The notes under the pieces: generated by a model
What the model was told of the DNA's origin: nothing
Databases searched by the model: none
Seen by the model: the letters and a program-made list of their open reading frames with translations, nothing else
Assembly (NCBI GenBank): GCA_002269645.1
Contig: NIVC01001720.1
Location: 1-48,497 of the forward strand
Reading direction: 5' to 3'
DNA: 48,497 nucleotides
Origin: Macrostomum lignano
Taxonomy: Eukaryota
Shown here: piece after piece, positions 5,301-48,497 of the stretch
Numbering within the stretch: position 1 is the stretch's first letter
Layout of the letters: each line of letters starts with the position of its first letter
Translations under genes and position numbers: made by a program

Positions 5301-7338
5301 GAAATTGTCACTTTCGCTAGCTAGAAATTGTCACTCCTGCTATCTAGAAATTGTCACTCGTACTATCTAGAAATTGTCACTCCTGCTATCTAAAAATTGT
5401 CACTTGCTAGCTAGAAATTTTACGAGTTCCGACAAGGTGAAAATTTGAGCGTTTAAAATTTTGTACCACGAGAGAATTGTGGAGACAATTTTTTGCTGCG
5501 CCAAAACGAAGCAAACCAGGCACGCAAAGTTCAAGAAAACGGCTTAAATTTTTGTTGAACACCTCAAACAAGAGCAGATTCAGTAGATCTCAATGCACCA
5601 ATCAGCTCTGCGCCCCACTGCGGCTTTGTCAAGCCTCCAAATTTCATCATCACGTCGACTACACTATGTGTCTGCATTATCTAGGACTTTCGCGACCAAC
5701 AGGTTTTACCCAGGCAGAGCTTGCGGACATTCAACAGATGGCACCAGGTGACTATGGACACCCTGTTGCCGAGTTCACTGCTCAAACCTCGTTATTTGGC
5801 AAAGCTCAACTCATTGACATCATCAACTGGCCTCTCAAACAATCAGGCATCATCCCGATGACGTCTTGGTGGTGACTAAATAAGCGTGAGAAGCGTTTAA
5901 TATGCGGTTAATATAACTTTTTGCACGCCATTTAATACTACGAGCAAGCAATTTAATAATCAGTGGGGAAACCCAGCGCTAAATGATGGATTTCTCAGTA
6001 CTCAATGGTCCAAACCATGGGCTTTGGAGCAACCAATTTAATAATCCGAGCACCTAGTTAGTCATTTCCAGTGTTACTTGTGCCGCATTGGCTGGATGCA
6101 TTCAACATACACTGTAGTAGAAGACGGAGAAAGCTTTGTCACTGCTGATGAAGCGCTAGAAGAGCAAGATCATGCAGCACCATGGCTTCACTGTTGACGC
6201 TAAGAAATTTGCAGAACACCATGGTCTCGAGGGAAGCCACAATAAGCAAAAGCCTAGACAAGCAGTTAATCACTCTGAAGTGCCTGGGAAGAGATGCGGA
6301 CATGCCGGTGGTGTGGAACTTGCCAGAGAACATAGCACGGAGGCAGGAATTGGCACAGTGGCTGACTGATCTGACTTTAGAATGTCATCTGATCTATGTT
6401 GATGAAAATCATCCAGGAGGTTTCACCGGATCTTGGCCTGGTTCACCATAAGATCGTGAGCCAAACACCGACTGCCAACCTATTACAGGTGTTCATCGAG
6501 GAGCTGCTCAACTCGGTCAATAATCTGAAGGCGTCAACAGTGGAGCCACGGTGCTGCATGATTTTGCTCTCCTCAGAAGTGACAAAGCTTCTCCGTCTTC
6601 TTCAAAAAGCTCGCTGGCTTCCTCGTCTTCTACCATGTTGAATTCGAGCGTCTATTTGCAGCCAATGCGACACAAGTAGCACTGGAAATGACTAAATGGG
6701 TGCTCGGATTATTAAATTGGTTGCTCCAAAGCCCATGGTACTGAGAAATCTATCATTTAGCCCTGGGTTTCCCCACTGATTATTAAATCGCTTGCTCTCA
6801 ACATCAAATGGCTTGCAAAAAGATATATACCTTGCCAATTCCAATGCTAGTTATTATTATTTACTAATATAAAACTAAACAATAAGAAAATTACCTTCGG
6901 ATATTTGTCTGCTATTATAACGCAGACATCGTCCGAGAACAGCGCTTGTCCGTCCGCCTGCATGGCTGACTTCAGCCCGTTCTGCCAGCCAAACTGAACT
7001 GGGCCTTTGCTGGCAACCGTCGCAGCAGTCATAGCCGGCTTGGAAGTCTTGATGGCTGGCTCGGCAAGCTCTGCAGGTGAAGTTGATGATGAAGATGACA
7101 ACGATACTAGTGCGGCATCGCTGAGCTTTCGCTTCCCTGACGGTCTTTTGTCGTTCATTAAAAGCCTCCAGTAACCGCGATAGGGTAGTTTTCGCTGAAA
7201 ATGGAATATTAAACTGAATGAAGAGCAAAGAACAAAGATACATGTATACTTACCCAAGCTACTTTTTTATCAACAGTTGCATGCGGTAGCTATAGATTCC
7301 TCAGCACTTACAATACCAAGAGCGCAGAAAATACGCAT
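2399..7338 (-). CDS. APTX: Aprataxin (HIT-family DNA 5'-AMP hydrolase with C-terminal C2H2 zinc finger, no FHA domain)
   Basis: Exons read by eye, all with GT-AG ends and compatible phases: 7338-7312 (optional), 7194-6895, 3576-3459, 3346-3289, 2765-2399. The translation gives WQNGLKSAM..DDVCVIIADKYPK|ARHHYLVLP..|..FRFGFHAVPSMS|QLHMHVISQDF..CLKTKKHWLSFTTEFF..LKCNQCARVAKNMPDLKAHLAGH, matching aprataxin motifs. 289 aa from ATG 7338, or 268 aa from ATG 7158. Confidence 0.92.
2963..3000 (+). ncRNA. Minimal hammerhead-ribozyme-like motif (Penelope type), probably degenerate
   Basis: cc-CTGAAGA-t-GACTA-atg-TAGTC-GAAA-acggc-TC-gg. Conserved core, perfect 5-bp stem II and 2-bp stem I, but no palindromic stem III. 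Confidence 0.45.
3700..4400 (+). mobile_element. 5'-truncated, decayed Penelope-like retroelement (RT C-terminus + GIY-YIG endonuclease)
   Basis: WKTGLIRCFLHRAF..LLSYNGYP (post-RT region), then at 4141 AGVVYKFVCSEDQSISYIGKTKRHLYTRVREH*..AINEHL..LEALYIK (GIY-YIG) with an in-frame stop and a frameshift. Lies antisense inside an APTX intron. Confidence 0.85.
4528..4576 (+). ncRNA. Minimal hammerhead-ribozyme-like motif at the 3' end of the Penelope fragment
   Basis: cc-CTGACGA(4532-4538)-imperfect stem II (tcat/atga)-GAAA(4558-4561)-TGCA-TC-gg, followed directly by AATAAA. ATGCAT is the palindromic stem III expected of minimal dimeric hammerheads. Confidence 0.55.
4690..4942. repeat. 21-bp minisatellite, ~12 copies
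   Basis: Unit CGCAGGCACTCATTTTAGCGC with variants. Confidence 0.95.
5092..5415. repeat. 23-bp minisatellite, ~14 copies
   Basis: Unit TAGAAATTGTCACTCCTGCTATC, with variant TAGAAATTGTCACTTTCGCTAGC at copies 6 and 10. Confidence 0.95.
5913..6826 (+). mobile_element. Internally deleted Tc1/IS630-like DNA transposon with long (~200 bp) TIRs
   Basis: Left arm ~5913-6110 is an imperfect reverse complement of right arm ~6640-6826 (e.g. ctttggagcaaccaatttaataatccgagcacc / ggtgctcggattattaaattggttgctccaaag). TA at both edges. The internal remnant reads NLPENIARRQELAQWL..LIYVDE, resembling the first catalytic Asp region. Confidence 0.7.
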
Positions 7339-8573
7339 CTCTATTACAATTTAATAAACAAAATGATCCAAGCATTTATCTACATGAATTCGCTGATATT
7401 TCTACTGACTTGTTCAGCCAGAGGATTAGACTAGCTACTTAGCATTTTAAAAATCGGCATCACATCCCATAGAAGTTCAGAAATTCCCGGATTAGTAGTA
7501 CTCCTTGAATTTTCTGTGAGCAAAACAAAAAATGAAGTTTTAATTTAGAGGGTTAATTAAGTAATACACCAGCATAGAAGCAAGAGGAGGCTGTGACGGT
7601 GTCACTTTGGTCGTTATCCTATTTGAGGGTTAATCACTTATTGCTTTCTGTAATCTTTGGAGCATCTATTAAAATATGTAATTTAACATCTTCTTGCGTT
7701 GCTTAAGAAAAGTTTGCAAGTAGCGTAGCAACTTGGCTGACATTTGTTTTACTAATTAAGGGTTGCGTTTTATATAAAATACAATTTATTGAATCGGGTT
7801 TCTTTCCAAGCGTGCGTCGTGCGGAGCTCAGAGCGAGTGGCCGTTGCCTATTGCACTCCATACATTTGACTTGATAGATCGATAGTAACTTCATATATCT
7901 GCGTAGGTCACTACGACTATATATACATTGATTAGCTCATTAGAAGTTGGATTCAAACTCAATTTGCATTAATCTGAGTTCGCCTAGGATTCAGGTGCTA
8001 CCGCGCCACACGATCGCTGGAAGTTCCCATAGTCACATTAAGCTAATAGCGTTAACTCTCAACCCAATCGCGCCTTTATCTGGCTTTGTTATTTGGTATT
8101 TTTTGTCAAAAGGCATACTTAAATATAAACAATACCAAATAATTCAAACTTTTCTGTCAATACGACCAATTATTGTTTTTAAATTCAAAGCGTATCGAAA
8201 GCTCGTGACTATTATTTTCTATATAATACACACTTATTAGCGTTACCCAAATTAATTACTAATAACTTAGTGCTTCAATGTTTTATCGGAAGACAGAACA
8301 CAGGTTTGATAGACAGTTGAACACATTTTACAGCTGCTAGGTCAGAAAGCATGACGGACTGTGACAGATTTTCATGCCATGCAGCTCAAACCGTGCTTTG
8401 AGACGCTTTTTTGGCGAATGAAAGCCACGAAAAAAACAAAATACGAAGTGCAATCTGGCAAATAAAAATTACAAGGTTCAAATGTTTTAATGAGCACGGA
8501 GGCACTTAAACGTTTTCAAAGCATACAGACAATTCTTAAGAGACTAACTTACACCTAAATCAAAGAAAGGAAA

Positions 8574-9018
8574 GATGATGTGAACTCATGAGTCAAAATG
8601 GAACCCGAAACATTGGGTCCCGATTTCTCCACGCCAATCCCTTCATTCGGAGCCAAATAGCTCCCGTTATGCCAAAAACCGACCACTTTAGAATCTGGGA
8701 ATCTCTATGGGGAGAAAGGGGATAAATGGGGATTTCACGATATAAAAGTGCGAAAATGATGTTCACCACCCTCCGTCTCGGAACGTCGGGTTAAACTCCA
8801 CTTCGACGAGGTAGAAATCGTCTGTCTAAAATGTGTGATACAAACCGGCCCCCTTTGACGCTATTTATGTCTCCATCAAGGTGGGGAAACTCGACAAAGA
8901 GCGTTAATCATGGTCATCTCGTCATTTAAGCACTTGAAGCTCCAAATGAAGAGATTGGCGTAGAGAAATCGGGACCCAATGTTTCGGGCTCCATTCTGAC
9001 TCTCAAATTCACATCCCC
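8574..9018. mobile_element. MITE with ~80-bp terminal inverted repeats
   Basis: gagtcaaaatggaacccgaaacattgggtcccgatttctccacgccaatc (~8590-8640) versus gattggcgtagagaaatcgggacccaatgtttcgggctccattctgactc (~8953-9003). TSD not resolved. Confidence 0.75.
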
Positions 9019-9237
9019 TTTGTCGACAATTATTAGTAGTTACAATATAGTTGATACTCGGAGATACGTCTAAATGGCGAATTACTGTTCAGATAAAAAA
9101 TTCTTAGTCAATAAGCTGAAGAGGTTCCAATTATTTCATGAGCTGACTACTGAAGGCTTTTTTTTACAAAAGCACAGATAATATAATTACTAGATGCAAC
9201 ATTAAAAACATTATAGTAACAAGAATTTCTAAAAAAG

Positions 9238-10371
9238 CTAAAGCCTTCTTAAACACCGAAGACAGGCCTCCTTGTTGGGAATTTCTTCCGTCACAGCCAT
9301 ATCAAGCGGTGTCTTGTAGCCATCCAGACCCTCACATTCGCTGTCACGAAATTTAGGATTCGCGCCATGCTTCATCAGCAGAGAAATCAGCTCAGGGTTT
9401 CCCGCTCTCACCGCAAAGTGCAGAGCGGTCAGACAGGTCGAGTGCTGCTTGAAGTGAACATCAACTGACCCGTTCTCAAGCAGCCACTTGCACACCTCAA
9501 ACTGGCCCTTCTGCACGCCCAGCATCAACGGAGTCAATAAGTTGCTGCTTTTAAAACACGCATCAAAATTTAGCTGCAATTGTGGCTTGGCATTACGACA
9601 GAAATTATGCAGGCTAGCAAGCATTTCAACCTTTCCAGCAGATAAAATATAATGAAGCGGTGTGTACTTCTTTCTATCAGTCATTTCGAATGCTTCTTTA
9701 ATTTGAGACAAGTCTATTTGTTGGGAATTTCTTTGAATATGATTCTTCATCACGGAAAAAATTATTTCAAGGGACTCATCAAATCTGAGCTCCGTGCACC
9801 TGTGAAACACACTTTTGCCTTCATTGTCGAAGCAGCGATAAATTATAGTCCGATCGAAATTCAGGAGTCGCTCAAATATGTCAGCAAAGTCGCGACTGTT
9901 CAGATGCACAGCTAGCATCATCAACGTGTGCCCATACCGAGGATTTCTGTATCCAAGCAGTCTGTCCAGCGACCCAACTCGTTCAGCCTCATTCAGCATC
10001 ATTTTCGCTGCAGCTCCATTGCCTGATTCCAGTGCTGCTTCGATCGGAATGTATCCAGTTCGATCTGGCCTAAACAGCATTGACGGAATCTGGCTGACAA
10101 TCCACTCTACTGTGCTGCTAGCGTCACCTGACTCGGCATACTTTTCAAGGCCGAGCTTCACAATGCCAGGGTACTCCGCGAACTCTTTTTATATGTTAGG
10201 TGGCATCTTACAGAATGCCTGCAGCACTTGGCCAGCTGATTGATCAGACAGTTTATCCTGAGGTCCCGAGTCGCCTTGCTGAGAAGGCCACGAGTCGATG
10301 CTGCTGAAGACATCAAGAGCTTCTAGAGAGGAAAAGTCGAAAAAAGGTCGGTCTGACTTATCTGCCGACAT
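9238..10371 (-). pseudogene. Ankyrin-repeat gene copy 1, one in-frame premature stop
   Basis: ORFs 10371-10189 and 10161-9238 are in the same frame, separated by TAA at 10191-10189 where copies 3/4 have CAG (Gln). About 7 ANK repeats (TPLHY, TPLML, TALHFAV..GADP). Confidence 0.8.
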
Positions 10372-11267
10372 GCAAGAGAATTTGTAGCTGTTAATTCCGA
10401 AAGCCGTTTTAGATGAAATCTATTTGTCAGATTTTTCAATTGGAGATCATGGCGATTTCAGCGCTGAAATGTGAAGAATTCGTTTCACTTGATTTTGAGA
10501 GCTCACACAGTCTGTAACTACGATTTTTTATGACTCGTTTGATCGCAGTGTGAACAATATTTTATGAACCATCGCTGCTTTTTCTTAACTTGAAAACGAA
10601 GTTTTTTAGAAACTGAAGGAAAGTATTATTGCAGAGAGACAGTTCGCACAAGCTACTTTGATATCATGTGAACGATATATTCATAAAGCAGCGTATAATC
10701 ACACGCCTGCATACGTTTCAGTTTAAAAACTGACTCGTATTAATAAGTTTTTGGAATTGGGAATTCAACGAATTAGACAAAAATGTTATTTGAGCAACTT
10801 TGAAAGGGATTAAAGGTGTGTACCTAAAAAGAAAGGAGAAATTATTCTTAGGAGGAGTAAAACCAAATGGGATTAATAACTTAAGAATGTTAAATATTTT
10901 CAATTTCAATCAAAGGCACATTAGTAGCACTTTATAACATACACAGACTATGTTGTTAGGTTGTACAGCGAATTTTTTGATGGGTTGCATTCAGGATAAA
11001 TTTTGTTTTCCTGCAATAATCCGCTGAAAAATTATAGAAAAGCTACTCAGCAGTCTCAGCTGTAAGCTATTCTAGCAATCTCGGGACACGAAACTCTTGC
11101 TCGTATAAACAATGCACTGTCAACACCGCATACATAAGGACGACATTTTTACAAACAAAAATCCGGTTTGCTCGTACAAATTGAATCAGCAGGTTATATA
11201 AAAGTAAGCTCCTTAACTGAAACAAATTGCGTAGCTAAATGTATGAGCCTTATACATACATTTCTCA

Positions 11268-12402
11268 TTATATATCAGAAGTTCTTAAGCTCTTGACACA
11301 GGCCAGCTTATTTGGGACGTCCTCCGTCTCTGCCATAACAAGCGGTGTCTTGTAGCAACAGAGAAGATCGCACTCGCTGTCACAAAACCCAGGATCTGCG
11401 TTGTGTTCCATCAGCAGAGAAATCAGCTCAGGGTTTCCCGCTCTCACCGCAAAGTGCAGAGCTGTCAGACATGTCGAGTGCTGCTTGTAGTTAACATCGA
11501 CTGACCCGTTCTCAAGCAGCCACTTGCACACCCCAAACTGGCCCTTCTGCACAGCCAGCATTAGTGGAGTGAAAGCCGAGCTGCTTTGGTGGCAAGCATC
11601 AAAGTTCAGTACGATTTGCATGTGTCAGAAATATATCAAGATCTGTTAACATTGCTATATTTCCTGAGGAAGAAATATAGTGAATAGGTGTTTTCTCCCG
11701 ATTGTCCGCTACCTCCAGCGCTGCCTTTGCTTCAGTAGCGATTCGATCCTTGTGCACGCTAGGGAATCTCTTCAAAATGGTTAGAATCATCCGAAAGGAT
11801 TCACAGTAGTCGAACTCTGTGCACCTATGAAGCACATTTCTACCCTCATTGTCGCAGATTCTATGCAGCCCTGCTGGATCGAATTCAATCAATTTTAGAA
11901 GGATGTCCTCGCAATCTCGACTGTTCAGCTTCACTGCAAGCATAATCAAAGAGTGTCCATATAATTGATTTCTGTAAGCAAGCAGCCGTTGCAGTGTACC
12001 CGCATGCTTTGCAATGTCCAGCATCACTCTTGCAGCAGGTCCATTGCCCGACGCAAATGCCGCCTCAATGGGAATGTAACCGCTTTGATCCGTTCTAAAC
12101 AGCATTTCAGGAATCCAATAGATAAACCACTTCACTGTGCGTCTCGGATCGCCAGACTCTGCGTACTTTCTGAACGCCTGCTGCGCCATTCCCGGGTACT
12201 GGGCGAGCTCTTCTTGAACAGAAGTAAGCAATTTTCTAAAAGTATTCACTTCACTCCCAGGTGAAACAACCGATATTTCATTTTGTTTGTAAGAATGACC
12301 CCGAAGAGACGGCCAAGATTCGATACTGTTTAGAGCCTCCAAAGCTGCATCGTCAGCTGGAGCCTGAAGAAACGGTTCATTAGAATGATCTTCAGTTGAC
12401 AT
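11268..12402 (-). pseudogene. Ankyrin-repeat gene copy 2, one frameshift
   Basis: ORF 12402-11599 and ORF 11621-11268 overlap in different frames around cat-gca-aat-cgt (~11615). Joined, they align end to end with the other copies. An assembly indel cannot be excluded. Confidence 0.75.
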
Positions 12403-13730
12403 TTAACGGATTTATAAGGAGTTAGTTTAACGGCTGGCAGGTATTAGTGATACTTTTGTCATTTATCTCTTCCGTGGCCTCAGTCAATTTTGATTCATCA
12501 TTTCGCTGAAAACGAAGGGTTGAAAATTGCTAAGCTAGTTAAATTATTTATCGATAAAACAATAAAAATATTACATGTAACATTACACAGGACTGATCCT
12601 AATTGAACCACGTACCTGGCTAATACCCATTATTATCAATAATCTACCACTGCATTTTAAAGTCACACTTAGAAGACTTATATATGAGGCGTCACACTGG
12701 CGCGCTTGAATGGAAACTACGAAGCTCACATACTTTTTACGATTTTCAAAACTGCCGGTAACCGTCGCGATTTTGGTGAAGAATCAACTAATTTACATGT
12801 ACTTTAGAAGTTACGAACTACTCTTTTAAAAGTAAACAAGCACAAGTGGAAGTGAAGCAAAAGTGAATCCCAATATATAACAGAGGACCTGATATCCCAA
12901 ACAAGTTTGTAATTTAATTTGACGAAATAAATTAAGCGATACGATACCTTTTTGCAAGTAGTAGGATAAACATTTAGAGTAAGGTTTTACCACTCAGTGA
13001 CAGAAAACCGCTCTAGTAACAAACTGAAAGCAGAGTAATAGCAAAAACGAAGTAAATATCCATTAAATGGACACTCGCTACGATACAAGATATGGATTAT
13101 TTGTATGGAAATTCATAAAATAGCAGATAATATACTCATAAATAAAGACACTGTTCCAGAGAAATTACAAGGACCGCTAGAAGTTACCTTACCATTGTAC
13201 AACGGTAATTTCTAGTGGTACTTGTGTAATTAGTAAAAGGGAAAGGATCCTTAACAAAAGGCAGTGTACATATATGATTTAGGTGTACAGTGGCTCAATA
13301 GTAAAATCTCAAATTGAGTAACTATAGGCTTAAAATGAGAAGGCGAAATGAGTTTTTAAACAAAAATTTACCTGCAGTTATTAAGTCTTACTTACACTTT
13401 CAAAACGTTACAAAAATGAGCATTCACTTTGAGCATAATCAAAGTCTTATTCAAACCAATCTTCAAATCATGCTCAAACTCTTGAGCATGGACTCATGGA
13501 GCCCAGAAACTGCTCACTCAAGAGTCCGAGCTAAGACTCTTGGGTTGCATGCAGTGCAGTTGCTCTCTTGACTCAAATGTATATTGTCTAACAGACTTTC
13601 TTGCAGCGATTAGCTCGTAAAAAGCAAACAAAAATTACCAGATGTCATTAGCTTTGTGAAATACAGTACGAGTGTATTAAGTTCCTAGAACGAAGGCGTC
13701 TTGAACGAACGCAACCTTGAACAAAGGTTG

Positions 13731-14852
13731 TCATGAACGCGTCAATATTTTGATGCAAGCCTGCTTGTTTGGTATATCCTCCGTCTGTGCCATCCCCAGC
13801 GGTGTCTTGTAGTCAGCCACACCATCACACTCGCTGTCGATATACTCAGGATCAGCGCCATGCTTCATCAGCAGAGAAATCAGCTCAGGGTTTCCCGCTC
13901 TCACCGCAAAGTGCAGAGCTGTCAGACAGGTCGAGTGCTGCTTGAAGTGAACATCAACTGACCCGTTCTCAAGCAGCCACTTGCACACCTCAAACTGGCC
14001 ATTCTGCACGCCCAGCATCAACGGAGTCAACAATCTGCTGTCTTTAAAGCAGGCATCAAAGCTTATATTGATATTTTTATGACGCAGGAATCGCTGAAGA
14101 CTCTCGAGCATTTCAACATTCCCATCTAACGCGATGTAATGTAATGGAGTGTACTTCTTTGAGTCAGTCATTTCAAGTGCATCCTTTAAGTGGCGAATTT
14201 TATCTTTTAAAAACACACTAGAAAGATTTATTAAAAGACCAAAAATTATCTGCAATGAGGTACAAGACTTTGACTTTGTGCACCTGTGAAAAACATTACA
14301 TCCGTCCAAATCGTAGCAACGATGTACCGACGTGGGGTCGAAATTCAGGAGTCGCTCAAATATGTCAGCAAAGTCGCGACTGTTCAGATGCACTGCCAGC
14401 ATCATCAACGTGTGCCCATACCGAGCATTTCTGTATCCAAGCAGTCTGTCCAGCGACCCAACTCGTTCAGCCTCATTCAGCATCATTCTCGCTGCAGCTC
14501 CATTGCCTGATTCCAGTGCTGCTTCGATCGGAATGTACCCAGTTCGATCAGTCCTAAACAGCATTGACGGAATCTGGCTGACAATCCACTCTACTGTGCT
14601 GCTAGCGTCACCTGACTCGGCATACTTTTCAAGGCCGAGCTTCACAATGCCAGGGTACTCCGCGAACTCTTTCTGCACATTAGGTGGCATCTTACGGAAT
14701 GTCTGCAGCACTTGGCCAGCCGACTGAACAGCCAATTCGTCCTGCGGGTCCGAGCCATTTTGAAGAGACGGCCACGTGTCAATGCTGCTGAAGGCATTCA
14801 GGGCATCTCCCTTGTCAATTGGAGCCACTAAGAACACTGTTTCTGTTGCCAT
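13731..14852 (-). CDS. Ankyrin-repeat protein copy 3 (373 aa, coding region uninterrupted)
   Basis: True ATG at 14852. A ~100-aa non-repeat N-terminal region precedes ~7 ANK repeats (GYIPIEAA, GHTLMMLAV, GCNVFH, TPLHYIA, TPLMLGV, TALHFAV..HGADP, KTPLGMA). Confidence 0.9.
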   Translation of the reverse strand: MATETVFLVAPIDKGDALNAFSSIDTWPSLQNGSDPQDELAVQSAGQVLQTFRKMPPNVQKEFAEYPGIVKLGLEKYAESGDASSTVEWIVSQIPSMLFRTDRTGYIPIEAALESGNGAAARMMLNEAERVGSLDRLLGYRNARYGHTLMMLAVHLNSRDFADIFERLLNFDPTSVHRCYDLDGCNVFHRCTKSKSCTSLQIIFGLLINLSSVFLKDKIRHLKDALEMTDSKKYTPLHYIALDGNVEMLESLQRFLRHKNINISFDACFKDSRLLTPLMLGVQNGQFEVCKWLLENGSVDVHFKQHSTCLTALHFAVRAGNPELISLLMKHGADPEYIDSECDGVADYKTPLGMAQTEDIPNKQACIKILTRS

Positions 14853-16097
14853 TCACCGCAGTGCGAAACGGATTTAATCTGGAATTTTTTAGAGACCTCA
14901 ATTGGTGAACTTCGATGTGTATCCAACCGCTAAAAAACTTAATCGTCGGGATGCAAATGAAAAGCTACAGCTTAGAGTAGTCTTGTGACCTAGTTTGAAC
15001 GAATGAATGAACGGCGCAGTTTAATTTTAGTCGGAAAGCTACTGAAAACTTAAACTTGAAATGTACATTAAAATTATATATTTTACTAATGAAATTACAA
15101 GACGAAATTTTCCCTTCGGTAAGGTGAACCATTAAATAACACACTGTTTGTAAAATTCAATAAAGAACCCACTGAATCTATGACGTATCTGTAGTTGAAG
15201 ACAAAATATATGCTTTAATAAGTGGTACAGCAAAAGAAGAGAAGTAAATTTACCTTCTGCAGAACACATAGACACACTTAAAGTGAATTTACAAGTACCT
15301 GTTTCAATGATTTCGAGAACAATGCTATATAGACCATAAAACTAGTTTGGCAGAGTTAGTCTACTGATAAGTAGAAAGTGTGGAGTGTGTAGCGGAAAGC
15401 TTGCTAGGCGAGAGTGCAGAGTATAAAAAGAGGTTCTGCTCAGCCTAGCTATTGGGTGGAGTCTAGCCTTGGGCAGGCCGGCTGAGGGTCGAGGAACTCT
15501 CTAGGGACAGAAACCATTCCTGGCAGCATGACCCCGGTTCGATTCCAATTTTAGCTAGGTGGTGTACACGTATTTCACGCTAACAGCTTTCTAGAGTATT
15601 ATATACATCAGAACTCTTATAACTTCTTTGAGAAGGTATAATATAACGCAAGGTCAAATTTATATTGGCCTAAAACGTTTGATAGAAGCAAAGTGTCATT
15701 GTTCTGAGAGAAGAGTGCCAAAAAAAACAATCAGGAGACTTTGGCAGTGTTGGCGCTTTAACAAAACATTACTGTCAGGAAATTTTGAGCACAAACTCGC
15801 TTTACTTGAGGCTTACGCATTTTCAAATGAAACAAAAACAACAGGAAAAATTAAAAGTTCTATTGTCAAACAGGCATAGCAAAAATCAAGAGGCATTTTA
15901 AGACCAGCCTGAAATACACCAATAATTTCATCTCTGACCATGACAGACGTTTCTTGCCAAACTCGAGTCTAAATAGACGCCGATCGTACATAATTAGCTT
16001 AATACAGCAGGCTGCAGGACTGGACAATTGGCTGGTCATCCAAATGTCTTGATGGTCTGATTCTGTTCGTTTCAAGGATCGCAGAGAATGGCTAGAC

Positions 16098-17234
16098 TTA
16101 AAAAAATTCTTCAGCTCTGCGGAGACATCGAATACAAGCCTGCTTGTTCGGAATGTGTTCAGTTTCTGCTACAGCCAACGGTGTCCTGTAGCCCTCAACA
16201 CCATCACACTCGCTGTCGATATACTCAGGATCAGCGCCATGCTCCATTAACAGAGAAATCAGCTCGGGGTTTCCCGCTCTCACCGCAAAGTGCAGAGCTG
16301 TCAGACAGGTCGATTGCTGCTTGAAGTGAACATCAACTGACCCGTTCTCAAGCAGCCACTTGCACACCTCAAACTGGCCATTCTGCACGCCCAGCATCAA
16401 CGGAGTCAACAATCTGCTGTCTTTAAAGCAGGCATCAAAGTTTATATTGATATTTTTATGACGCAGGAATCGCTGAAGACTCTCGAGCATTTCAACATTC
16501 CCATCTAACGCGATGTAATGTAATGGAGTGTACTTCTTTGAGTCAGTCATTTCAAGTGCATCCTTTAAGTGGCGAATTTTATCTTTTAAAAACACACTAG
16601 AAAGATTTATTAAAAGACCAAAAATTATCTGCAATGAGGTACAAGACTTTGACTTTGTGCACCTGTGAAAAACATTACATCCGTCCAAATCGTAGCAACG
16701 ATGTACCGACGTGGGGTCGAAATTCAGGAGTCGCTCAAATATGTCAGCAAAGTCGCGGCTGTTCAGATGCACTGCAAGCATCATCAATGTGTGCCCATAC
16801 CGAGCATTTCTGTATCCAAGCAGTCTGTCCAGCGACCCAACTCGTTCAGCCTCATTCAGCATCATTCTCGCTGCAGCTCCATTGCCTGATTCCAGTGCTG
16901 CTTCGATCGGAATGTATCCAGTTCGATCTGGCCTAAACAGCATTGACGGAATCTGGCTGACAATCCACTCTACTGTGCTGCTAGCGTCACCTGACTCGGC
17001 ATACTTTTCAAGGCCGAGCTTCACAATGCCAGGGTACTCCGCGAACTCTTTCTGTACATTAGGTGGCATCTTACGGAATGTCTGCAGCACTTGGCCAGCC
17101 GACTGAACAGCCAATTCGTCCTGCGGGTCCGAGCCATTTTGAAGAGACGGCCACGTGTCAATGCTGTTGAAGGTATCCAGGGCGTCATCAGTTGGAGCCC
17201 TAAAAAATGACTGCTCGCTGGGCTCCGAGGCCAT
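16098..17234 (-). CDS. Ankyrin-repeat protein copy 4 (~378 aa, coding region uninterrupted)
   Basis: First true ATG at 17234 (MASEP); the ORF track starts 33 nt earlier at a non-ATG codon. Nearly identical to copy 3 over the core. Confidence 0.9.
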   Translation of the reverse strand: MASEPSEQSFFRAPTDDALDTFNSIDTWPSLQNGSDPQDELAVQSAGQVLQTFRKMPPNVQKEFAEYPGIVKLGLEKYAESGDASSTVEWIVSQIPSMLFRPDRTGYIPIEAALESGNGAAARMMLNEAERVGSLDRLLGYRNARYGHTLMMLAVHLNSRDFADIFERLLNFDPTSVHRCYDLDGCNVFHRCTKSKSCTSLQIIFGLLINLSSVFLKDKIRHLKDALEMTDSKKYTPLHYIALDGNVEMLESLQRFLRHKNININFDACFKDSRLLTPLMLGVQNGQFEVCKWLLENGSVDVHFKQQSTCLTALHFAVRAGNPELISLLMEHGADPEYIDSECDGVEGYRTPLAVAETEHIPNKQACIRCLRRAEEFF

Positions 17235-18677
17235 CACGACTTTCTGAAGCAGATTGTCAATCAGCAAATAAATTTGCGGCCTGTCTGCAGCATAAACAGT
17301 TTTGCCGTAATGTCAACAATGAGCAGTCTTTGAGTACATTATTAGGTAAGAAGCTTAACCTAGGTATCTAGACTACTCTTTTTGGAATATATACAACACG
17401 AAGATTTATTGATCTGCTGAAGAACTTTGAAAACGCTAAAAGTACAACAGTAATTTGTCCGGTTAAATATTCGGTTTATGATTATACGCCTAGGAAGGCA
17501 GTCAAATCTGGATCGGCTGTTGATAAGTTGTGAAATGCAGTCTGTTTTTAAGTCGAGCAGTTATTTGTTAGGTATATAGGTTTAAATGAGTTGTTAGTAC
17601 TTACTACACGGCAAGAGGCCCAGAGCTTACAGGAGGGACAGAAAGGCACAGGTAGATTGATGGGGTATTTTTGGGTTAAGTATCTGTTGTGTTTTACTTT
17701 GAAATAACAAAGTTTAATCTGGAGCTGGATCTAGTTCTGTAGACGGAGCTAGTTTCGGTTTTAGAACTATTTCTGGCCTAAAGAGCAGCAATGAATCTTC
17801 AATCATGAAGATTGCAATAACAAGCAAACTGATTTACAAGCCAGCTCTCTAACACACTGGCACCTCGGGAGGAAACTTGAAAAATGCAATGCGCGTGTAT
17901 TTTATTTCAAGCAGTCTTCGCCATCCAACCCGAATCAGAGGATTGAGTGGATGAGCAAATTCAGCAGAGGATACGCAATTACTATTGACGTACGTACGGG
18001 TCCGCCAGTGCAGGACAAAACAGGTCGTGTAATCAGCTACTGAAGCAACAATGAATATTGCTATTGAATGATATATGCTTTTAATGTTTATACAAGCCAA
18101 AGTTAAACAAAGGTACTCTTACAATAGCTTCAATCAATAAATCAAGTATACTGTGATAAGGAAAAATTAAATTCAGCATCTCAGCATCCTATCAACAGGC
18201 CTTGTGTCATAAGGACCCCCTTCGAGTCTCCTTCTTTACTACGATAAAATCGACCCAGCGACGACCGAAGTTTTAAGGTGCACTTGGTGATGATAAGTAA
18301 TAACATTAAATATTGTAGCAGAATACATCAACGTGACTACACATAAATAGAGTGCCGTGTGACTGTGTGAACAGGTGGAACTCTTTTGAGGTCCTGTTAC
18401 CACAGAATTAAAACTATTTAATCTTCATAAGAATCAACACGTATAGATCAGAAAGTCTAAACAAATAGAGCTAGGTACATGCAATGTACATGATTTACAT
18501 TCAAAGCGCGTTTACATACAATACAACAGTTCAAGCTGCCTGATAATCACAAGACACAAACGCACAAGCGTTGGGCAATTATAAACAAAACAGCTTGTTC
18601 TAACTTGTACTTTAGAACCTTTCGCATTCACTACTTGTAAGTAGTCTAGAATAGCAATTCAACAACTTCGCTACTCA

Positions 18678-20372
18678 TCAGGAGGTAGTGGCGGGAATAA
18701 CAAGCTCCACGAGCTCGCCAGCTTTGATATCCAGTAGCACCTGTTTGATGACGCACATGGAAGCATGGTCAGAGTCTGACAGAAGAGATATGGCCAGGAA
18801 TACAGGGTCAGCTTCAGAATGAATGTAGTCTTTATCGGCCTTCAGATCTGGCGCGTACTGGATCAGCCGGCTGATGAACTGCTCAGACTTGGCCAGTCTG
18901 GATAGCTGTTTGGAGAGCTCTTCGCGCCTTTCGGTGCCAAACAGTTGGAGGTCTCTGACAATCTTTTTATCTCTGAAGAATTCTGCGGGATCGCATTGCA
19001 GTTGTTGTTGTTGCGGGATTGCTGGGTGTGTTAGTGACGAGGAAGAGGAGGCTGAGGCTGCATTGCCAGATGCAGACGCAGCGGAAGCAGACAATGCAGG
19101 AGTTTCCGTTAGCACAGCTCTCGGCATTGAGTCCACTGTATAGTTGTAGCTGCAGGCCAATGCACTGGGGTCAAGCGGGAGGTACTCAAAACATTTCTTT
19201 TTGTTTGGGATCGCTTCCGTTGTGGCAATCTGCAGCGGAGTCTTGTAGCCATCAAGCCTCTCGCAGTCCTCATCAAAAAACTTTGCATCGGCTCCATGAG
19301 AGCTGAGCAGGCCGATGAGGTCGTAATAGCCCAGTTTGACTGCGAAATGCAGCGCAGTGAAGCAGGACACGGGCTGCTTCGCCGACACGTCTGCGCTGCC
19401 CTTCTCAAGCAGCCACTTGCAGGCGTCGTAGCGACATGATTCAACCGCAATCATCAGCGGCGTCTTGCTGTCGCTGGTCAGGAAGCGAGCATCGTAGTCA
19501 ACTTGGAGAGCCTTACTTCGTGCGAACGAATCTAAAACGTTGAACATCTCGATGTCGCCAGCCTCGGCCATGTAGTGAATTGGAGTCTTATAGAACCGAT
19601 CGGTCATGTCTAGCGCCTCTTTGATACTATGCTTACTGATCTCCATGGAGTCCATCTCCAGAACAGCGTCTAGAATGATGCGGAAGGAGGTGGCATATTT
19701 GTCAACAGCGCAGCAGTGGAAGACATTCCGACCGTGCGTGTCGTAGAACTGATAGATCTGAGTTGGGAAACTCTGCAGCAGATTAATGAGGATGTCCCTG
19801 CAGTTGGCGCTGTCAAAGTCAATTGCCAGCATTAGGAGAGTGTGCGCAGCCGAATTCCGGTGAGACAGGACAAATTTCTTCTGCGGTCCACTGCTGGCCA
19901 GCTCGATAAAGAATCTGCTGGCGTGTTGGTTCTTTTTGAGCAAGGCCCTGCCAAGCGGACTGTCCGCAGTTTGATTATAAGTTTGATTATCAACAGTTAA
20001 CAGGTACTCTGGCGCCTCCCGCATCAGCGACTCTATGGAACGAGTTGCACTGCTGCTGGACGCGTAGTTCAACAACAGAGCCCTGATCTTATCTTCGTAG
20101 TTAAACAGAGACTTCTGAATATTCGGTGGAAGAGCGCGGAACTTCCTAAGCTCGTCGGCGTGCTCCATAGTTGCGGGGGCATTGCTGGGAGCGGCTCTGG
20201 ATGCCGGCGCTGCCCGACCATTGGCGGTGGTTGCACTTGGACGGGTCGACATGATGACACGAAAAGGTTCCGCCCGGTGTGTATCAGTACTGCCGCTTAT
20301 CTTCCAGGACTGGGAAAGATTGCTGCTGCTGCCTGGACTGGGGGATACTGCTGCTGCTGCTTGGGCCTGCAT
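18678..20372 (-). CDS. Ankyrin-repeat protein copy 5 (564 aa) with low-complexity linker and C-terminal death-domain-like region
   Basis: Divergent but colinear ANK core (TPIHYMA, TPLMIAV, TALHFAV..HGADA, KTPLQIA), an Ala/Ser/Gln linker, then ~95 aa (~18690-18960) with death-fold-like spacing. Confidence 0.88.
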   Translation of the reverse strand: MQAQAAAAVSPSPGSSSNLSQSWKISGSTDTHRAEPFRVIMSTRPSATTANGRAAPASRAAPSNAPATMEHADELRKFRALPPNIQKSLFNYEDKIRALLLNYASSSSATRSIESLMREAPEYLLTVDNQTYNQTADSPLGRALLKKNQHASRFFIELASSGPQKKFVLSHRNSAAHTLLMLAIDFDSANCRDILINLLQSFPTQIYQFYDTHGRNVFHCCAVDKYATSFRIILDAVLEMDSMEISKHSIKEALDMTDRFYKTPIHYMAEAGDIEMFNVLDSFARSKALQVDYDARFLTSDSKTPLMIAVESCRYDACKWLLEKGSADVSAKQPVSCFTALHFAVKLGYYDLIGLLSSHGADAKFFDEDCERLDGYKTPLQIATTEAIPNKKKCFEYLPLDPSALACSYNYTVDSMPRAVLTETPALSASAASASGNAASASSSSSLTHPAIPQQQQLQCDPAEFFRDKKIVRDLQLFGTERREELSKQLSRLAKSEQFISRLIQYAPDLKADKDYIHSEADPVFLAISLLSDSDHASMCVIKQVLLDIKAGELVELVIPATTS

Positions 20373-23186: not shown

Positions 23187-25116
23187 AACAACAACACAAC
23201 AACAGAGTACGCTGCCAGTTCACAAAAGCAGCGTCAGATGGCGCGCTTCAAAGCTTGGGCGCGAACAAAAGCCGCACCGCCGGCAGAGTCCGGGGCGCCG
23301 GCGTCAGCCAGCAGACAGTCGACGTAGCGCCGAGTCTTCGCCTGTCCCCGCCGGTAGGGTGCCTGCAACGTAAGTAGCAGCACCTCCTGCACCGGCTCCG
23401 GACAGTAGGCCTCGGCGCGGATGACGTGGCCTGCCAGCTGGAGTCGCCGACGGCGCAGCAGATCGCTAGGACGGGCCAGGCCGGCGCGATGATAGAGCGC
23501 CGTGTTGGTGACTCGCTCGTTGCCGATCTTGAAGGCGGCGCGCAGCAGGCCAGCGTGCGCCGCGTCGACTTGAGCCTCGAGCGAGTCTGTCAGCGTCCAG
23601 GTCTCGGCGTTGTATAACAGGACGGTCTCGATCACCGCCTGGAACAGCGCCGCCCTCTGGCGGTCCGGTAGGGCCTCGGACTGCAGGACTGACCTTATAG
23701 AACGAAAGGCAGCCCAAGCAAGTCCTCGGCGACGCCGCAGATCCTCGCGGACGTCGGGAACCAGACCGCCGAGGTAGACGAACTGCTGACATCTTGGAAG
23801 CTCACTCGCCTGTCCGTCAGCGCCTCGGCAGAAGATTGCAGCCTCGGTGTCGTCCGGCACGCATAGCACGACGGTCTTCTGCGTGTTGACCACCAGGCCG
23901 ACGCTCGCCGCAACGGCAACCAGCCTATCCAGCTGTCGTTGCGCGCCCTCGACGGTCGAGGACAGCAGGGCGAGGTCATCGGCGTAGCCAAGCACGCTGA
24001 GCCGTCTCTCCGGTTGGCGTCGACCCACGCGTCGCCGCAGCAGGAAGCCGTCGTCGTTGGAAGGCAGAGCAGTCCGTAGCACCCAGTCAAGCACCAGAAT
24101 AAATAGGAACGGCGCTAGCGTATCTCCCTGGAGCACCCCGGAGGATGTCTCGAAGAAATCCGATAGGCCGTCCTATCGGAGACGACCCCGCGATCGACGA
24201 AGCGAGGGAAGATCTGGAGAGGCTCCGACTGAGTGGGCGGCCAACTCGCGAGGCGGAGGAGGCTCTGGCGGCTGTCTACCTGCAGCGGCAGCAGTCCGCT
24301 GTCGATGACGCCATCCAAGCCGTCTCTGCCGCAGGGCCCGATGCCAGAGGGCGCGTGGCCTGGTCCGCCATCAACACTCTGACGGGGCGAAAGCGGCGCA
24401 TCGCGCTCAACCTGGCAGGCGACACTCCGGATGACCGCAGGAACGAGCTGCGCGAGTTCTTCGCCGCCATTGTCAACGCGCCGCCCCCTCCGCTTCCAGA
24501 AAATCTGAGGCTGCCGCCGGAGACGCCGTTGCCGGCGGAGGAGAGCTTCAATGTTGCCCCAGTCAGCACAGCCGACGTTGTGAAGTTCGCTCGGCAGTCG
24601 CCGGGCGGCAAAGCGCTTGGTCCGGACGAGGTGCCCACCGAGGCGCTGCGGATCCACTGCGTGGCCACTGAGGTCGCCAGAGTGATGAACCGCGTGCTTT
24701 TCGGTGAGGTGGCGCCAAACGAATGGACCACGGCGCACATCGTCGCCATTCCAAAGAAGCCGGGCACCACCAAGCTCGAGGAGCATCGAGGCATCTGCCT
24801 ACAGTCCTGCGCCGCGAAGCTGTTCAACCGCATGCTGCTATCGCGGTTACAGCCTGTGCTGGACCCGTACCTGCGACCTGAGCAGAACGGATTCCGGCCC
24901 CATCGCGGCACAGTGACGCAGATCCTGGCTCTTCGACGAGTCATCGAGGAGGCGCGCATCCGCCAGTTGACCCTGATCCTGATCTTCGTCGATTTCAGGA
25001 AGGCTTTCGACTCGGTCGTGAGGGACGCGCTCCCAGAGGTGCTCCGTGCGTACAACGTGCCAGAGCTGCTGATTTCTGCTGTCATGGCGCTGTACCACGG
25101 CACGACGGCTGCTGTC
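23187..25116 (-). mobile_element. RTE-like non-LTR retrotransposon, 5'-truncated with inverted 5' segment
   Basis: The minus part (24171-23234) encodes the RT C-half (QGDTLAPFLF, YADD, YLG) and ends in a hairpin plus a (GTT)n tail. The plus part (24172-25116) encodes the preceding RT N-half (GPD, RGICL, EQNGFR, FVDFRKAFDSV). TSD TTCATTCTAAT at 23176-23186 and 25117-25127. Confidence 0.95.
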
Positions 25117-25871
25117 TTCATTCTAATGCAAAGATTTCATTTTTTAGCTTGTAAAAGTAAAAAACTTTTGCTAAAAATGAGTGTTTTTATAAAAAATTGT
25201 ATTTTTTTAATGCCATAATGCACTTAATTATTATAAAAATACTCCTAATTATAAATGAGCCTAATTAGCATACTTTAGTATCTTAAAAAACTAAAATTTT
25301 ATACTATAAATTTACAATGCTAAATATTTCATTCATATTTTAAAATCCAAAAAGCTGTTCTAAAACTAAAGTAAACTATTGCTCTGAGTTTTAATACCAA
25401 AATAGCAGAGTTAATAGGTTTACTTCCACTAGAAGTACATTGCTATCGCCTATCATGCTTGTGTAGTAGGCCTAATACCTCTATCTCTCAAAAATCCCAC
25501 TAGATGCCACAAAGTTGTAGCAGGCCCCTTAATTCTACCTTTCCTAACTCTACTAGATATTACCAAGTTGCTATAGGCCTTATTAATTTCTTACCTAGTT
25601 GTACTAAACTATACTGGATTTTTACTGTTTTCCTAGAATTTAATTCCTACACTTACATGTACTTTTATACTTTATGGGCTATCGTCGCTACGAATTACCC
25701 CTGGTAGCCTCAGTGCCCGAGCGGCAAGACACTGCTAACTACTGCTAAATTTGTATCCTACAGTCCAAACACGACGTTTACCACAGATCGAGGGGTTTTC
25801 GGCTTCCTTTATTACTGTCTCTCACGACTTAGAACTGTATCACGCTTGGCTGCAACAGCTTGGACAGTTTA

Positions 25872-48422: not shown

Positions 48423-48497
48423 GTGCGCGCTTTGCTGAATAATGATTCATTAATGGCCTGTTTATTATAATCGAGGATCTGACAGTCCTGACAGAAG

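What the first reader, a model, noticed from the sequence alone, without database searches (positions are those of the whole stretch)
9238..20372. Head-to-tail array of five ankyrin-repeat genes: candidate undescribed sensor/adaptor family
Seen: five same-strand paralogues in 11 kb, none with a coding intron. Each has a shared ~100-aa non-repeat N-terminal region (e.g. FRKMPPNVQKEF..GLEKYAES) and ~7 ANK repeats. The spacers show no evident mutual similarity. Four copies stop right after the last repeat and one continues into a death-fold-like domain. Two copies are disrupted. I do not recognise the family. Inference: birth-and-death turnover, variable central repeats and one signalling-competent member resemble innate-immune or allorecognition clusters.
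Basis: partly seen in the sequence, partly recalled or inferred. Interest (0 to 1): 0.78.

Follow-up and report, generated by a model that had tools for sequence, protein, structure and literature searches.

The report
Flatworm-specific tandem ankyrin-repeat gene array
Five intronless ankyrin-repeat genes lie head to tail in the flatworm Macrostomum lignano; they form an unnamed family seen only in this species, one member carries a probable death-fold signalling domain, and the array is reshaped by recombination and gene decay with no sign of immune-type diversifying selection.

Summary
Five same-strand, single-exon ankyrin (ANK) paralogues lie at 9238-20372 on the minus strand. Their spacers share no similarity. 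Two copies are broken: c1 by a TAA nonsense codon, c2 by a 2-bp deletion. Only c5 has a C-terminal extension.

The window is Macrostomum lignano DNA. An exhaustive search of 1.84 billion proteins and a word-indexed search of 5.8 billion found family-specific relatives only in this species, all labelled "hypothetical". The N-terminal ~100 aa has no Pfam match.

The c5 C-terminal domain has no Pfam Death match. Its AlphaFold model retrieves almost only death, CARD and pyrin domains from the PDB, none significantly (best E 0.8, TM about 0.5). A distant paralogue, P0017, has the same domain.

I compared two other copies of the locus, one 99% and one about 93% identical. They show unequal crossing-over, gene-conversion tracts and differing pseudogenisation. 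The "variable central repeats" are old divergence, and the flanking segments are homogenised. pN/pS is a uniform 0.32 in every segment, so diversifying selection is not seen.

The best reading is a lineage-restricted ANK adaptor family whose founder type is ANK plus a death-fold domain, with death-domain-less derivatives. The immune or allorecognition idea is unsupported. Interest is modest.

The parts
9238..10371 (-). c1: ANK paralogue disabled by a nonsense codon (TAA at 10189-10191, Gln to stop in the conserved PPNVQK motif). Otherwise it reads through 377 codons. Its counterpart E in L002 is intact.
   Evidence: c1-E dN/dS 0.34
11268..12402 (-). c2: the most divergent short paralogue, disabled by a 2-bp deletion near 11620 that splits it into ORFs 12402..11599 and 11621..11268. 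Its counterpart D in L002 is intact at 378 aa.
   Evidence: c2-D dN/dS 0.15 with 6 nonsynonymous and 11 synonymous differences
13731..14852 (-). c3: intact 373-aa short paralogue. N-terminal region is aa 1-100, followed by about 7 ANK repeats, and the stop comes right after the last partial repeat. It is the only copy intact in the window, in L001 and (as C) in L002.
   Evidence: (P0152, 99% identical, BOX15_Mlig001172g1)
16098..17234 (-). c4: intact 378-aa short paralogue and a three-part mosaic. Its 5' end and 5' flank match copy A of L002. Its middle is c3-like (0.3-1.9% nucleotide divergence). Its 3' ANK segment and 3' flank match copy B of L002.
18678..20372 (-). c5: intact 564-aa founder-type member. 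It has a low-complexity N-terminal extension, the conserved N-terminal motif, about 7 ANK repeats, a Ser/Ala-rich linker and a C-terminal helical domain.
   Evidence: (P0001, 99% identical, BOX15_Mlig013882g3)
18681..19001 (-). C-terminal domain of c5 (aa 458-564): a predicted helical bundle, death-fold-like. It is conserved at 33% identity in the distant paralogue P0017.
   Evidence: (pLDDT 75.5, pTM 0.73); no Pfam hit
14346..14717 (-). Homogenised (gene-conversion) segment, shown here in c3 at aa 46-169. The equivalent stretches are c1 9862-10233 and c4 16725-17096. It differs by only 1.9-7.3% in nucleotides among seven copies at two loci, and c2/D is excluded at about 35%.
14058..14345 (-). 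Divergent central cassette (ANK repeats about 3-4), shown here in c3 at aa 170-265. The equivalent stretches are c1 9565-9861, c2 11601-11886 and c4 16437-16724. It differs by 30-48% in nucleotides between paralogue lineages but only 0.3-5.4% between counterparts at the two loci.

Best explanation
The region is a tandem array of an unnamed ankyrin-repeat gene family found only in Macrostomum lignano in everything searched.

Shown:
- The founder-type architecture, present in c5 and in the unlinked paralogue P0017, is an orphan N-terminal region with a conserved F-[RK]-x-[LM]-P-P motif, then about 7 ANK repeats, a linker and a small C-terminal helical domain.
- The short copies c1-c4, and A-E at the sister locus, form one clade that lost the linker and the domain once.
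- The array evolves by three processes. Unequal crossing-over produced c4, an A/B recombinant. Gene conversion is confined to parts of the coding sequence. Pseudogenisation differs among the three redundant subgenome versions of the locus: 3 of 5 copies are intact in the window, 1 of 5 in L001, and 6 of 6 plus a fragment in L002.
- The short copies are under moderate, uniform purifying selection (pN/pS 0.32).

Inferred:
- The proteins are cytosolic protein-protein adaptors.
- In c5 and P0017 an ANK-bound partner is coupled to a death-fold domain that could join homotypic DD, CARD or PYD-type oligomers.
- The DD-less short copies keep the conserved N-terminal module and the last ANK repeats, but each lineage has its own ancient central cassette. 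They would therefore bind related partners with different specificity and cannot nucleate a death-fold assembly, acting as specialised adaptors, competitors or modulators.

My confidence in the genomic and evolutionary description is about 0.85, in the death-fold assignment about 0.55, and in the adaptor/modulator mechanism about 0.3.
For: Organism and restriction of the family:
- c5 is 99% identical to PAA69073.1 and c3 is 99% identical to P0152, both from M. lignano.
- Among the best 150 of 9506 hits in the exhaustive search, only P0001, P0003 and P0017 (all M. lignano) align outside the canonical repeats at aa 230-400.
- A search with c3 aa 1-230 returned four proteins, all from M. lignano.

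Architecture and conservation of the C-terminal domain.

Death-fold evidence:
- The AF2 model has pLDDT 75.5 and pTM 0.73.
- 37 of 46 Foldseek PDB matches are death-fold domains (p75NTR, ankyrin-1/G/B, RIPK1, TNFR1, TRADD, IRAK4, FADD, UNC5H2 and MALT1 DDs; NLRP3, ASC and pyrin PYDs; Apaf-1 and Dronc CARDs), with TM 0.45-0.57.
- The best matches in the viral library are also CARD, DD and DED proteins.

Single loss of the domain:
- In the NJ tree the short copies are monophyletic at 100% bootstrap, inside c5 and P0017.
- No remnant of the domain lies downstream of the short copies.

Recombination and conversion:
- Similarity between paralogues stops inside the CDS, and the spacers are unrelated.
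- Segment-wise dS and nearest neighbours disagree between segments.
- The flanks of c4 are orthologous to A on the 5' side and to B on the 3' side.

Selection: pooled pN/pS is 0.32, Fisher p 5e-9, and 0.21-0.36 in every segment.

Expression: the GenBank models of Mlig_3_7 are derived from an RNA-seq transcriptome assembly (PMC5730564), and copies of this family are among them.

Host-like composition: GC3 is 0.41-0.60, against 0.62 for the neighbouring formin ORF.
Against: - There is no functional or expression-pattern data. The gene ids were not found in the supplements of three M. lignano transcriptome papers.
- The death-fold assignment rests on one of five AF2 models (the other four have pLDDT 46-56), built from a two-sequence alignment.
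- No Foldseek match reaches E<=0.001. Pfam Death is not detected even at E<=10. A profile search of PDB sequences gave nothing relevant.
- c5 against c5h evolves at pN/pS 0.78, not distinguishable from neutral, and c5 has a nonsense codon in L001. The DD-bearing gene may therefore be dispensable in at least some subgenome copies.
- Restriction to M. lignano may partly reflect the absence of other Macrostomum proteomes from the databases.
Confidence: 0.55

Rival explanations
1. An innate-immune or allorecognition-type sensor cluster. The paralogues would diversify their central repeats under positive selection to recognise variable ligands, and c5 would signal through its death-fold domain.
For: - It is a tandem cluster whose copy number differs between locus versions and which contains pseudogenes.
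- The central cassettes are very different between paralogue lineages.
- One member has a death-fold-like domain.
- Platyhelminths are reported to lack FADD and CRADD, so non-canonical death-fold adaptors are conceivable (PMC11463336).
Against: - dN/dS in the central segment is 0.18-0.27 between paralogues and 0.36 pooled between subgenome counterparts, the same as elsewhere in the genes.
- The contrast between variable and conserved segments is present at synonymous sites too, so it reflects gene conversion and not selection.
- Each cassette is conserved between subgenomes, at 0.3-5.4% nucleotide divergence.
- The proteins have no recognisable sensor domain, signal peptide or transmembrane segment.
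- Differential decay of one locus version is what post-polyploid redundancy predicts (PMC12896417).
Confidence: 0.1
2. Divergent IkappaB / NF-kappaB p100-p105 C-terminal-half-like inhibitors. Six or seven ANK repeats, with a death domain in one member, would sequester a Rel-type or other transcription factor.
For: - The architecture (regulatory N-terminus, about 7 ANK repeats, death domain) resembles the C-terminal half of p100/p105. This is established knowledge of that family.
- The NF-kappaB p100 death domain is among the Foldseek matches (rank 12).
- c1 and E contain DSGPQD / DSGPRD, which resembles the DSGxxS degron.
Against: - The best 60 of the 258 PDB sequence matches (the only ones listed) are ankyrins, designed ANK proteins, TRPA1, latrotoxins, tankyrase and EHMT1. 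No IkappaB or Bcl-3 chain is among them.
- The best hits outside the species in 1.84 billion proteins are giant generic ANK proteins that align only over aa 230-400.
- The DSG motif is absent from c2, c3, c4, c5, A, B and C.
- The p100 match is weak (probability 0.18, TM 0.35), and p75NTR, ankyrin and RIPK1 DDs match better.
Confidence: 0.08
3. A functionless, decaying duplicate array. The copies in this window would be redundant leftovers of polyploidy drifting to pseudogenes, with no present role.
For: - 2 of 5 copies are broken here and 4 of 5 in the 99%-identical L001.
- c5 against c5h gives pN/pS 0.78, which is not significantly below 1.
- Nearly every M. lignano gene exists in three subgenome copies (PMC12896417).
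Against: - The short copies have pN/pS 0.32, significantly below 1 (p 5e-9), even in pairs that include the broken copies, so the lesions are recent.
- All six copies at L002 are intact.
- c3 is intact in all three versions.
- The family has kept about 31% identity over domains whose synonymous sites are saturated.

This rival is probably true for individual copies at this locus (c1, c2) but not for the family.
Confidence: 0.12
4. Foreign or retroposed origin. The genes are intronless because they came from a bacterium or a virus, or arose as processed retrocopies.
For: - All copies have single-exon CDSs, while M. lignano genes average 4.9 introns (PMC5730564).
- ANK proteins are common in intracellular bacteria and large DNA viruses (general knowledge).
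- Reverse-transcriptase fragments lie 3 kb upstream of c5.
Against: - Base composition and GC3 are host-like.
- The array is syntenic in three subgenome versions, flanked by an aprataxin-like gene.
- Death-fold domains are typically metazoan.
- No close bacterial or viral homologue appears among the top hits outside the generic repeats.
- Retroposition does not produce head-to-tail arrays.

A retrogene origin of the single ancestor cannot be excluded.
Confidence: 0.05

Closest known systems
ANKDD1A/ANKDD1B (ankyrin repeat and death domain-containing 1) and other ANK + death-domain proteins (ankyrins 1-3, DAPK1, NF-kappaB p100/p105)
   Same: c5 and P0017 combine an ANK solenoid with a C-terminal small helical domain whose predicted fold retrieves death domains first. 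These include the death domains of ankyrin-1, ankyrin-G, ankyrin-B and NF-kappaB p100.
   Different: There is no detectable sequence homology beyond generic ANK repeats, and Pfam Death is not detected. The N-terminal module is an orphan. The genes are intronless and sit beside a clade of DD-less tandem derivatives. ZU5/UPA, kinase and Rel domains are absent.
IkappaB family (IkappaB-alpha/beta/epsilon, Bcl-3, Cactus)
   Same: The short copies resemble it in size (about 375 aa), in layout (non-repeat N-terminus followed by about 7 ANK repeats) and in ending right after the last repeat.
   Different: No specific similarity was found. There is no conserved DSGxxS degron, and no PEST-like acidic tail apart from A's short extension. 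A partner is unknown.
Lineage-specific tandem ANK expansions evolving by birth-and-death and gene conversion (general knowledge: for example poxvirus and Wolbachia ANK genes, and vertebrate ANKRD/POTE clusters)
   Same: Tandem paralogues, unequal crossing-over, conversion tracts, pseudogenes, and a conserved frame with divergent internal repeats.
   Different: Here the differences between locus versions lie between subgenomes of a hidden polyploid. Selection is uniformly purifying, and the founder carries a death-fold-like domain.

Membership tests
Ankyrin-repeat superfamily (Pfam Ank, Ank_2 to Ank_5) | Significant matches to ANK repeat HMMs, with several consecutive 33-aa helix-turn-helix repeats | tested here: met
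   Ank_2 E 1e-21 to 5e-7 and Ank E 1e-13 to 3e-20 across the copies. Four repeats per protein score above every shuffle, and three more are degenerate.
Death domain (Pfam PF00531) / death-fold superfamily | Sequence match to the Death, CARD, PYD or DED HMMs | tested here: not met
   No Pfam family at E<=10 for the C-terminal domains of c5 or P0017. A profile search against PDB sequences gave only two irrelevant hits at E about 1.
Death domain / death-fold superfamily | Six-helix antiparallel bundle with death-fold topology | tested here: inconclusive
   The AF2 model has pLDDT 75.5 and pTM 0.73, but only 1 of 5 models is good and the alignment has 2 sequences. 37 of 46 Foldseek PDB matches are death-fold domains with TM 0.45-0.57, yet the best E is 0.82. 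The viral library gives the same trend.
IkappaB family | Specific sequence similarity to IkappaB or Bcl-3 ANK domains | tested here: not met
   None among the 60 PDB matches listed. No IkappaB-sized protein from another species is in the top 150 of the exhaustive search.
IkappaB family | Conserved N-terminal DSGxxS phosphodegron | tested here: not met
   A DSG-like string occurs only in c1 and E and is not conserved in the other copies.
IkappaB family | Binding and cytoplasmic retention of a Rel-homology protein | not testable with these tools
   Needs interaction experiments.
ANKDD1 | Orthology: reciprocal similarity across the ANK region and the death domain | tested here: not met
   All hits outside M. 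lignano align only to aa 187-404 of c5, within the repeat region (mostly about 230-400). None reaches the C-terminal domain.
Immune or allorecognition multigene clusters (NLR-like, FuHC/Alr-like) | Tandem cluster with copy-number change and pseudogenes | tested here: met
   5 copies against 6 plus a fragment, with lesions that differ among the three locus versions.
Immune or allorecognition multigene clusters (NLR-like, FuHC/Alr-like) | Diversifying selection (dN/dS above 1) on the recognition surface | tested here: not met
   For the central cassette, dN/dS is 0.18-0.27 between paralogues and pN/pS 0.36 between counterparts, the same as in the other segments. Caveat: dS is saturated between paralogues, counts are small between counterparts, and no site model was run.
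Immune or allorecognition multigene clusters (NLR-like, FuHC/Alr-like) | Induction by infection or wounding, or high polymorphism among individuals | not testable with these tools
   No expression or population data could be reached. The gene ids were absent from three sets of supplements.

The most novel reading that the evidence does not exclude
The family is a Macrostomum-specific death-fold signalling module. c5 and P0017 would be non-canonical ANK-DD adaptors that stand in for the FADD/CRADD-type adaptors reported missing from platyhelminths. The tandem DD-less paralogues would be dominant-negative or specificity-switching regulators, each recognising a different partner through its private central ANK cassette.
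Probability: 0.1. Interest if true: 0.6.

Novelty: new member of a known kind. Interest (0 to 1): 0.3.

Why it matters
If the reading is right, M. lignano has an orphan adaptor family that joins a common interaction scaffold (ANK) to a death-fold domain too divergent for sequence models. That would add one candidate to the poorly known cell-death and innate-signalling toolkit of flatworms, which are reported to lack FADD and CRADD (PMC11463336).

More certainly, the locus is a clean worked example of how a tandem family evolves in a hidden polyploid. Three versions of the locus can be compared side by side. An unequal crossover can be mapped to its flanks. Conversion tracts stop inside the coding sequence. 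Pseudogenes accumulate in two versions while the third stays intact.

It also carries a caution: "variable repeats between conserved ends" can be produced by gene conversion alone, without diversifying selection.

Tried and rejected
- The search for homologous proteins with full-length c5 and c3 timed out.
- The same tool, queried with the C-terminal domain as a two-sequence alignment and as the P0017 tail, returned nothing. It did not even return the proteins the queries came from, so those two negatives say nothing.
- Single-sequence AF2 of full-length c5 was useless (pLDDT 40.5), so there is no structural evidence for the N-terminal region.
- The P0017 locus could not be fetched, so whether it also sits in an array is unknown.
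- The gene ids Mlig013882, Mlig001172 and Mlig015446 were not found in full texts or in the supplements of three M. lignano papers.
- I considered reading the locus tags (g1..g4 under one Mlig number) as one polycistronic, trans-spliced unit. I dropped this because the same number also labels a gene on another contig (Mlig001172g14 is c5h on NIVC01000237).
- I considered the 131-aa antisense ORFs as the cause of the low dS in the homogenised segment. I rejected this because the antisense frame is not kept in c2/D or c5, and because within-locus paralogues are closer than cross-locus counterparts in that segment, which is what conversion predicts.
- P0158, a 53-aa metagenome protein placed in the same 90% cluster as c2/D, is unrelated in sequence.
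- Rfam and tRNA scans of the window were empty.
- No canonical poly(A) hexamer lies within 400 nt downstream of c1-c4. I draw no conclusion from this.

Full report
**What is there**

The window is animal DNA. It carries a formin FH2 ORF, cadherin exons, reverse-transcriptase fragments and an aprataxin-type zinc-finger ORF.

Five paralogous ORFs lie head to tail on the minus strand between 9238 and 20372:
- c1, 10371..9238
- c2, 12402..11268
- c3, 14852..13731
- c4, 17234..16098
- c5, 20372..18678

tblastn finds no sixth copy or fragment in the window. c3 (373 aa), c4 (378 aa) and c5 (564 aa) are intact.

c1 has a TAA at 10189-10191 in place of the Gln codon of the conserved PPNVQK motif. c2 has lost 2 bp near 11620 relative to its intact counterpart.

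Every copy is colinear with one uninterrupted reading frame, and the transcript-derived GenBank CDSs of the sister loci are single-exon. M. lignano genes average 4.9 introns (PMC5730564).

Pfam sees only ANK families. Four repeats per protein beat every shuffle against a consensus repeat, and three more are degenerate.

The first roughly 100 residues are non-repeat and have no Pfam match. They contain a motif, F(R/K)x(M/L)PPN(V/I)QK, conserved across the whole family.

The spacers (0.85-1.4 kb, GC 0.34-0.38) share no similarity with each other, even at word size 7.

**Whose genes these are**

c5 is 99% identical to PAA69073.1 and c3 is 99% identical to P0152, both 'hypothetical proteins' of Macrostomum lignano.

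HMMER against 1.84 billion representative proteins gave 9506 hits with c5. Among the best 150, only three align outside the canonical repeats (aa 230-400), and all three are from M. lignano:
- P0001, which is c5 itself
- P0003, a short copy
- P0017, a 578-aa protein 31% identical to c5

Searching 5.8 billion proteins with c3 aa 1-230 returned four proteins, all from M. lignano. The family is therefore undescribed and, as far as these databases go, restricted to this lineage.

**The C-terminal domain**

P0017 shares with c5 not only the ANK region but also the C-terminal domain (33% identity over 80 aa, E 3e-8 in the pairwise comparison). The domain is therefore old and was once constrained.

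No Pfam family matches it at E<=10, and a profile search of PDB sequences is empty.

An AF2 model built from the two-sequence alignment reached pLDDT 75.5 and pTM 0.73 in one of five models; the other four were poor.

Foldseek against the PDB gave no match at E<=0.001. However, 37 of the 46 matches at E<=10 are death-fold domains, with TM 0.45-0.57:
- death domains of p75NTR, TRADD, ankyrin-1/G/B, RIPK1, TNFR1, IRAK4, FADD, UNC5H2, MALT1, Pelle/Tube and NF-kappaB p100
- pyrin domains of NLRP3, ASC and pyrin
- CARDs of Apaf-1 and Dronc

In the viral library the best matches are again CARD, DD and DED proteins.

I read this as a probable but unproven death-fold domain. As a membership test, the sequence criterion is not met and the fold criterion is inconclusive.

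**How the array evolves**

Two more versions of the locus are in the Mlig_3_7 assembly.

L001 (NIVC01001350) is colinear with the window at about 99% identity. It shares both lesions and has two more:
- a nonsense codon in c5 (FFI*LASSG)
- a 45-bp deletion that removes the start of c4

L002 (NIVC01000237) is colinear at about 93% identity. It holds six intact genes plus a 97-aa C-terminal fragment:
- c5h, 561 aa
- A, 398 aa
- B, about 372 aa
- C, 373 aa, the counterpart of c3
- D, 378 aa, the counterpart of c2
- E, 376 aa, the counterpart of c1

This fits the reported genome structure, in which nearly every gene has three copies in subgenomes S, L1 and L2 (PMC12896417).

An NJ tree places the short copies in one clade with 100% bootstrap support, nested inside c5 and P0017. 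The linker and domain were therefore lost once, and no remnant lies downstream of any short copy.

Similarity between paralogues begins and ends inside the coding sequence. For example, c3 and c4 are 96.7% identical over 1052 nt, starting 48 nt after the ATG and ending 19 nt before the stop.

c4 is a mosaic:
- its 5' flank and first 46 codons are nearest to A (5.1% nucleotide divergence)
- its middle is nearest to c3 (1.9% and 0.3%)
- its last ANK segment and 3' flank are nearest to B (6.0%)

This points to an unequal crossover between A and B followed by conversion from c3.

A 372-nt segment (c3 aa 46-169) differs by only 1.9-7.3% among seven copies, and in several cases within-locus paralogues are closer than cross-locus counterparts. 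This is concerted evolution.

**Selection**

Between paralogues, the central segment (ANK repeats about 3-4) is 30-48% divergent in nucleotides. It is saturated at synonymous sites as well (dS 1.2 to above 2), with dN/dS 0.18-0.27. The conserved segment has dS of only 0.04-0.15.

The pattern of variable centre and conserved ends is therefore one of age and conversion, not of selection.

Pooled over the three pairs of short-copy counterparts, pN/pS is 0.32 (Fisher p 5e-9). It is 0.21, 0.34, 0.36 and 0.36 in the four segments, so purifying selection is moderate and uniform.

The broken copies show it too (c2-D 0.15, c1-E 0.34), so their lesions are recent.

c5 against c5h gives 0.78, not different from 1.

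**Interpretation**

Shown:
- an orphan, lineage-restricted ANK family
- a founder architecture of ANK plus a C-terminal helical domain
- DD-less tandem derivatives
- turnover by unequal crossing-over, gene conversion and differential pseudogenisation among redundant subgenome copies
- purifying selection on the short copies
- gene models that come from a transcript-based annotation

Inferred: the proteins are cytosolic adaptors. c5 and P0017 would couple an ANK-bound partner to death-fold oligomerisation. The short copies would bind partners through lineage-specific central cassettes without being able to signal that way.

The immune or allorecognition reading is not excluded, but it has lost its main argument. 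An IkappaB-like role has only architectural support. Foreign origin is unlikely because composition is host-like and the array is syntenic.

**Verdict**

This is a real, well-delimited and previously unnamed gene family of a common kind. It is interesting mainly as a candidate divergent death-fold adaptor in a phylum with a reduced death-domain toolkit (PMC11463336), and as a clear case of array dynamics in a hidden polyploid. Interest is 0.3.

Noticed in passing
window 14332-14727, 16711-17106 and 9878-10243 (+ strand): Long antisense ORFs (131, 131 and 121 aa) lie opposite the homogenised segment of c3, c4 and c1, and also opposite B, C and E in L002. They coincide with the stretch of very low synonymous divergence. 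The frame is not kept in c2/D or c5, so I read them as a by-product of conversion. An overlapping antisense gene was not formally excluded.
   Followed up: partly
L001 3031-3033, 4770-6713 and 7658-7670: The 99%-identical version of the locus has a nonsense codon in c5 and a 45-bp deletion removing the c4 start. It also has an extra 1.9 kb between c5 and c4 that contains (GA)n-like low-complexity sequence. Only c3 is intact there.
   Followed up: partly
window 19940-19960 (c5 aa about 133-137): There is an in-frame indel polymorphism in c5. The window reads NQTYNQTADSPLG, L002 reads NQTYRDSPLG and L001 reads NQTYRDRPLG.
   Followed up: no
window 4693-4937 and 5087-5419: Two minisatellites, of 21 bp x 11.7 copies and 23 bp x 14.6 copies, lie downstream of the array near the aprataxin-like gene. 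Both are also present in L001.
   Followed up: no
window 8571-8653 and 8939-9021: An inverted repeat of about 83 bp (87% identity) lies just downstream of the c1 stop. It may be a MITE-like element.
   Followed up: no
window 23234-25218, both strands: Reverse-transcriptase (RVT_1) fragments on opposite strands sit in a GC-rich patch (0.51). They look like a rearranged retroelement remnant, 3 kb upstream of c5.
   Followed up: no
window 2399-2890 (-), 40495-43356 (+), 44132-48470 (+): The neighbouring genes are an aprataxin-like gene (zf-C2HE; HIT and DcpS_C in the L001 model), a formin with a 953-aa single ORF containing FH2, and a multi-exon cadherin. The neighbours have introns, unlike the ANK genes.
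   Followed up: partly
P0017 aa 60-80 and 143-165; c1-c4 aa about 17-30: A second short N-terminal motif, (S/A)LDxFxSID(S/T)WPS, occurs in the short copies. It resembles a twice-repeated SLDEGIxxxxxIxSV motif in P0017 and is not obvious in c5. It may be a docking motif.
   Followed up: no
tool behaviour: The word-indexed protein search did not return P0001 or P0017 when queried with their own C-terminal domains. Negative results from that tool for short, non-repetitive queries should not be taken as absence.
   Followed up: no
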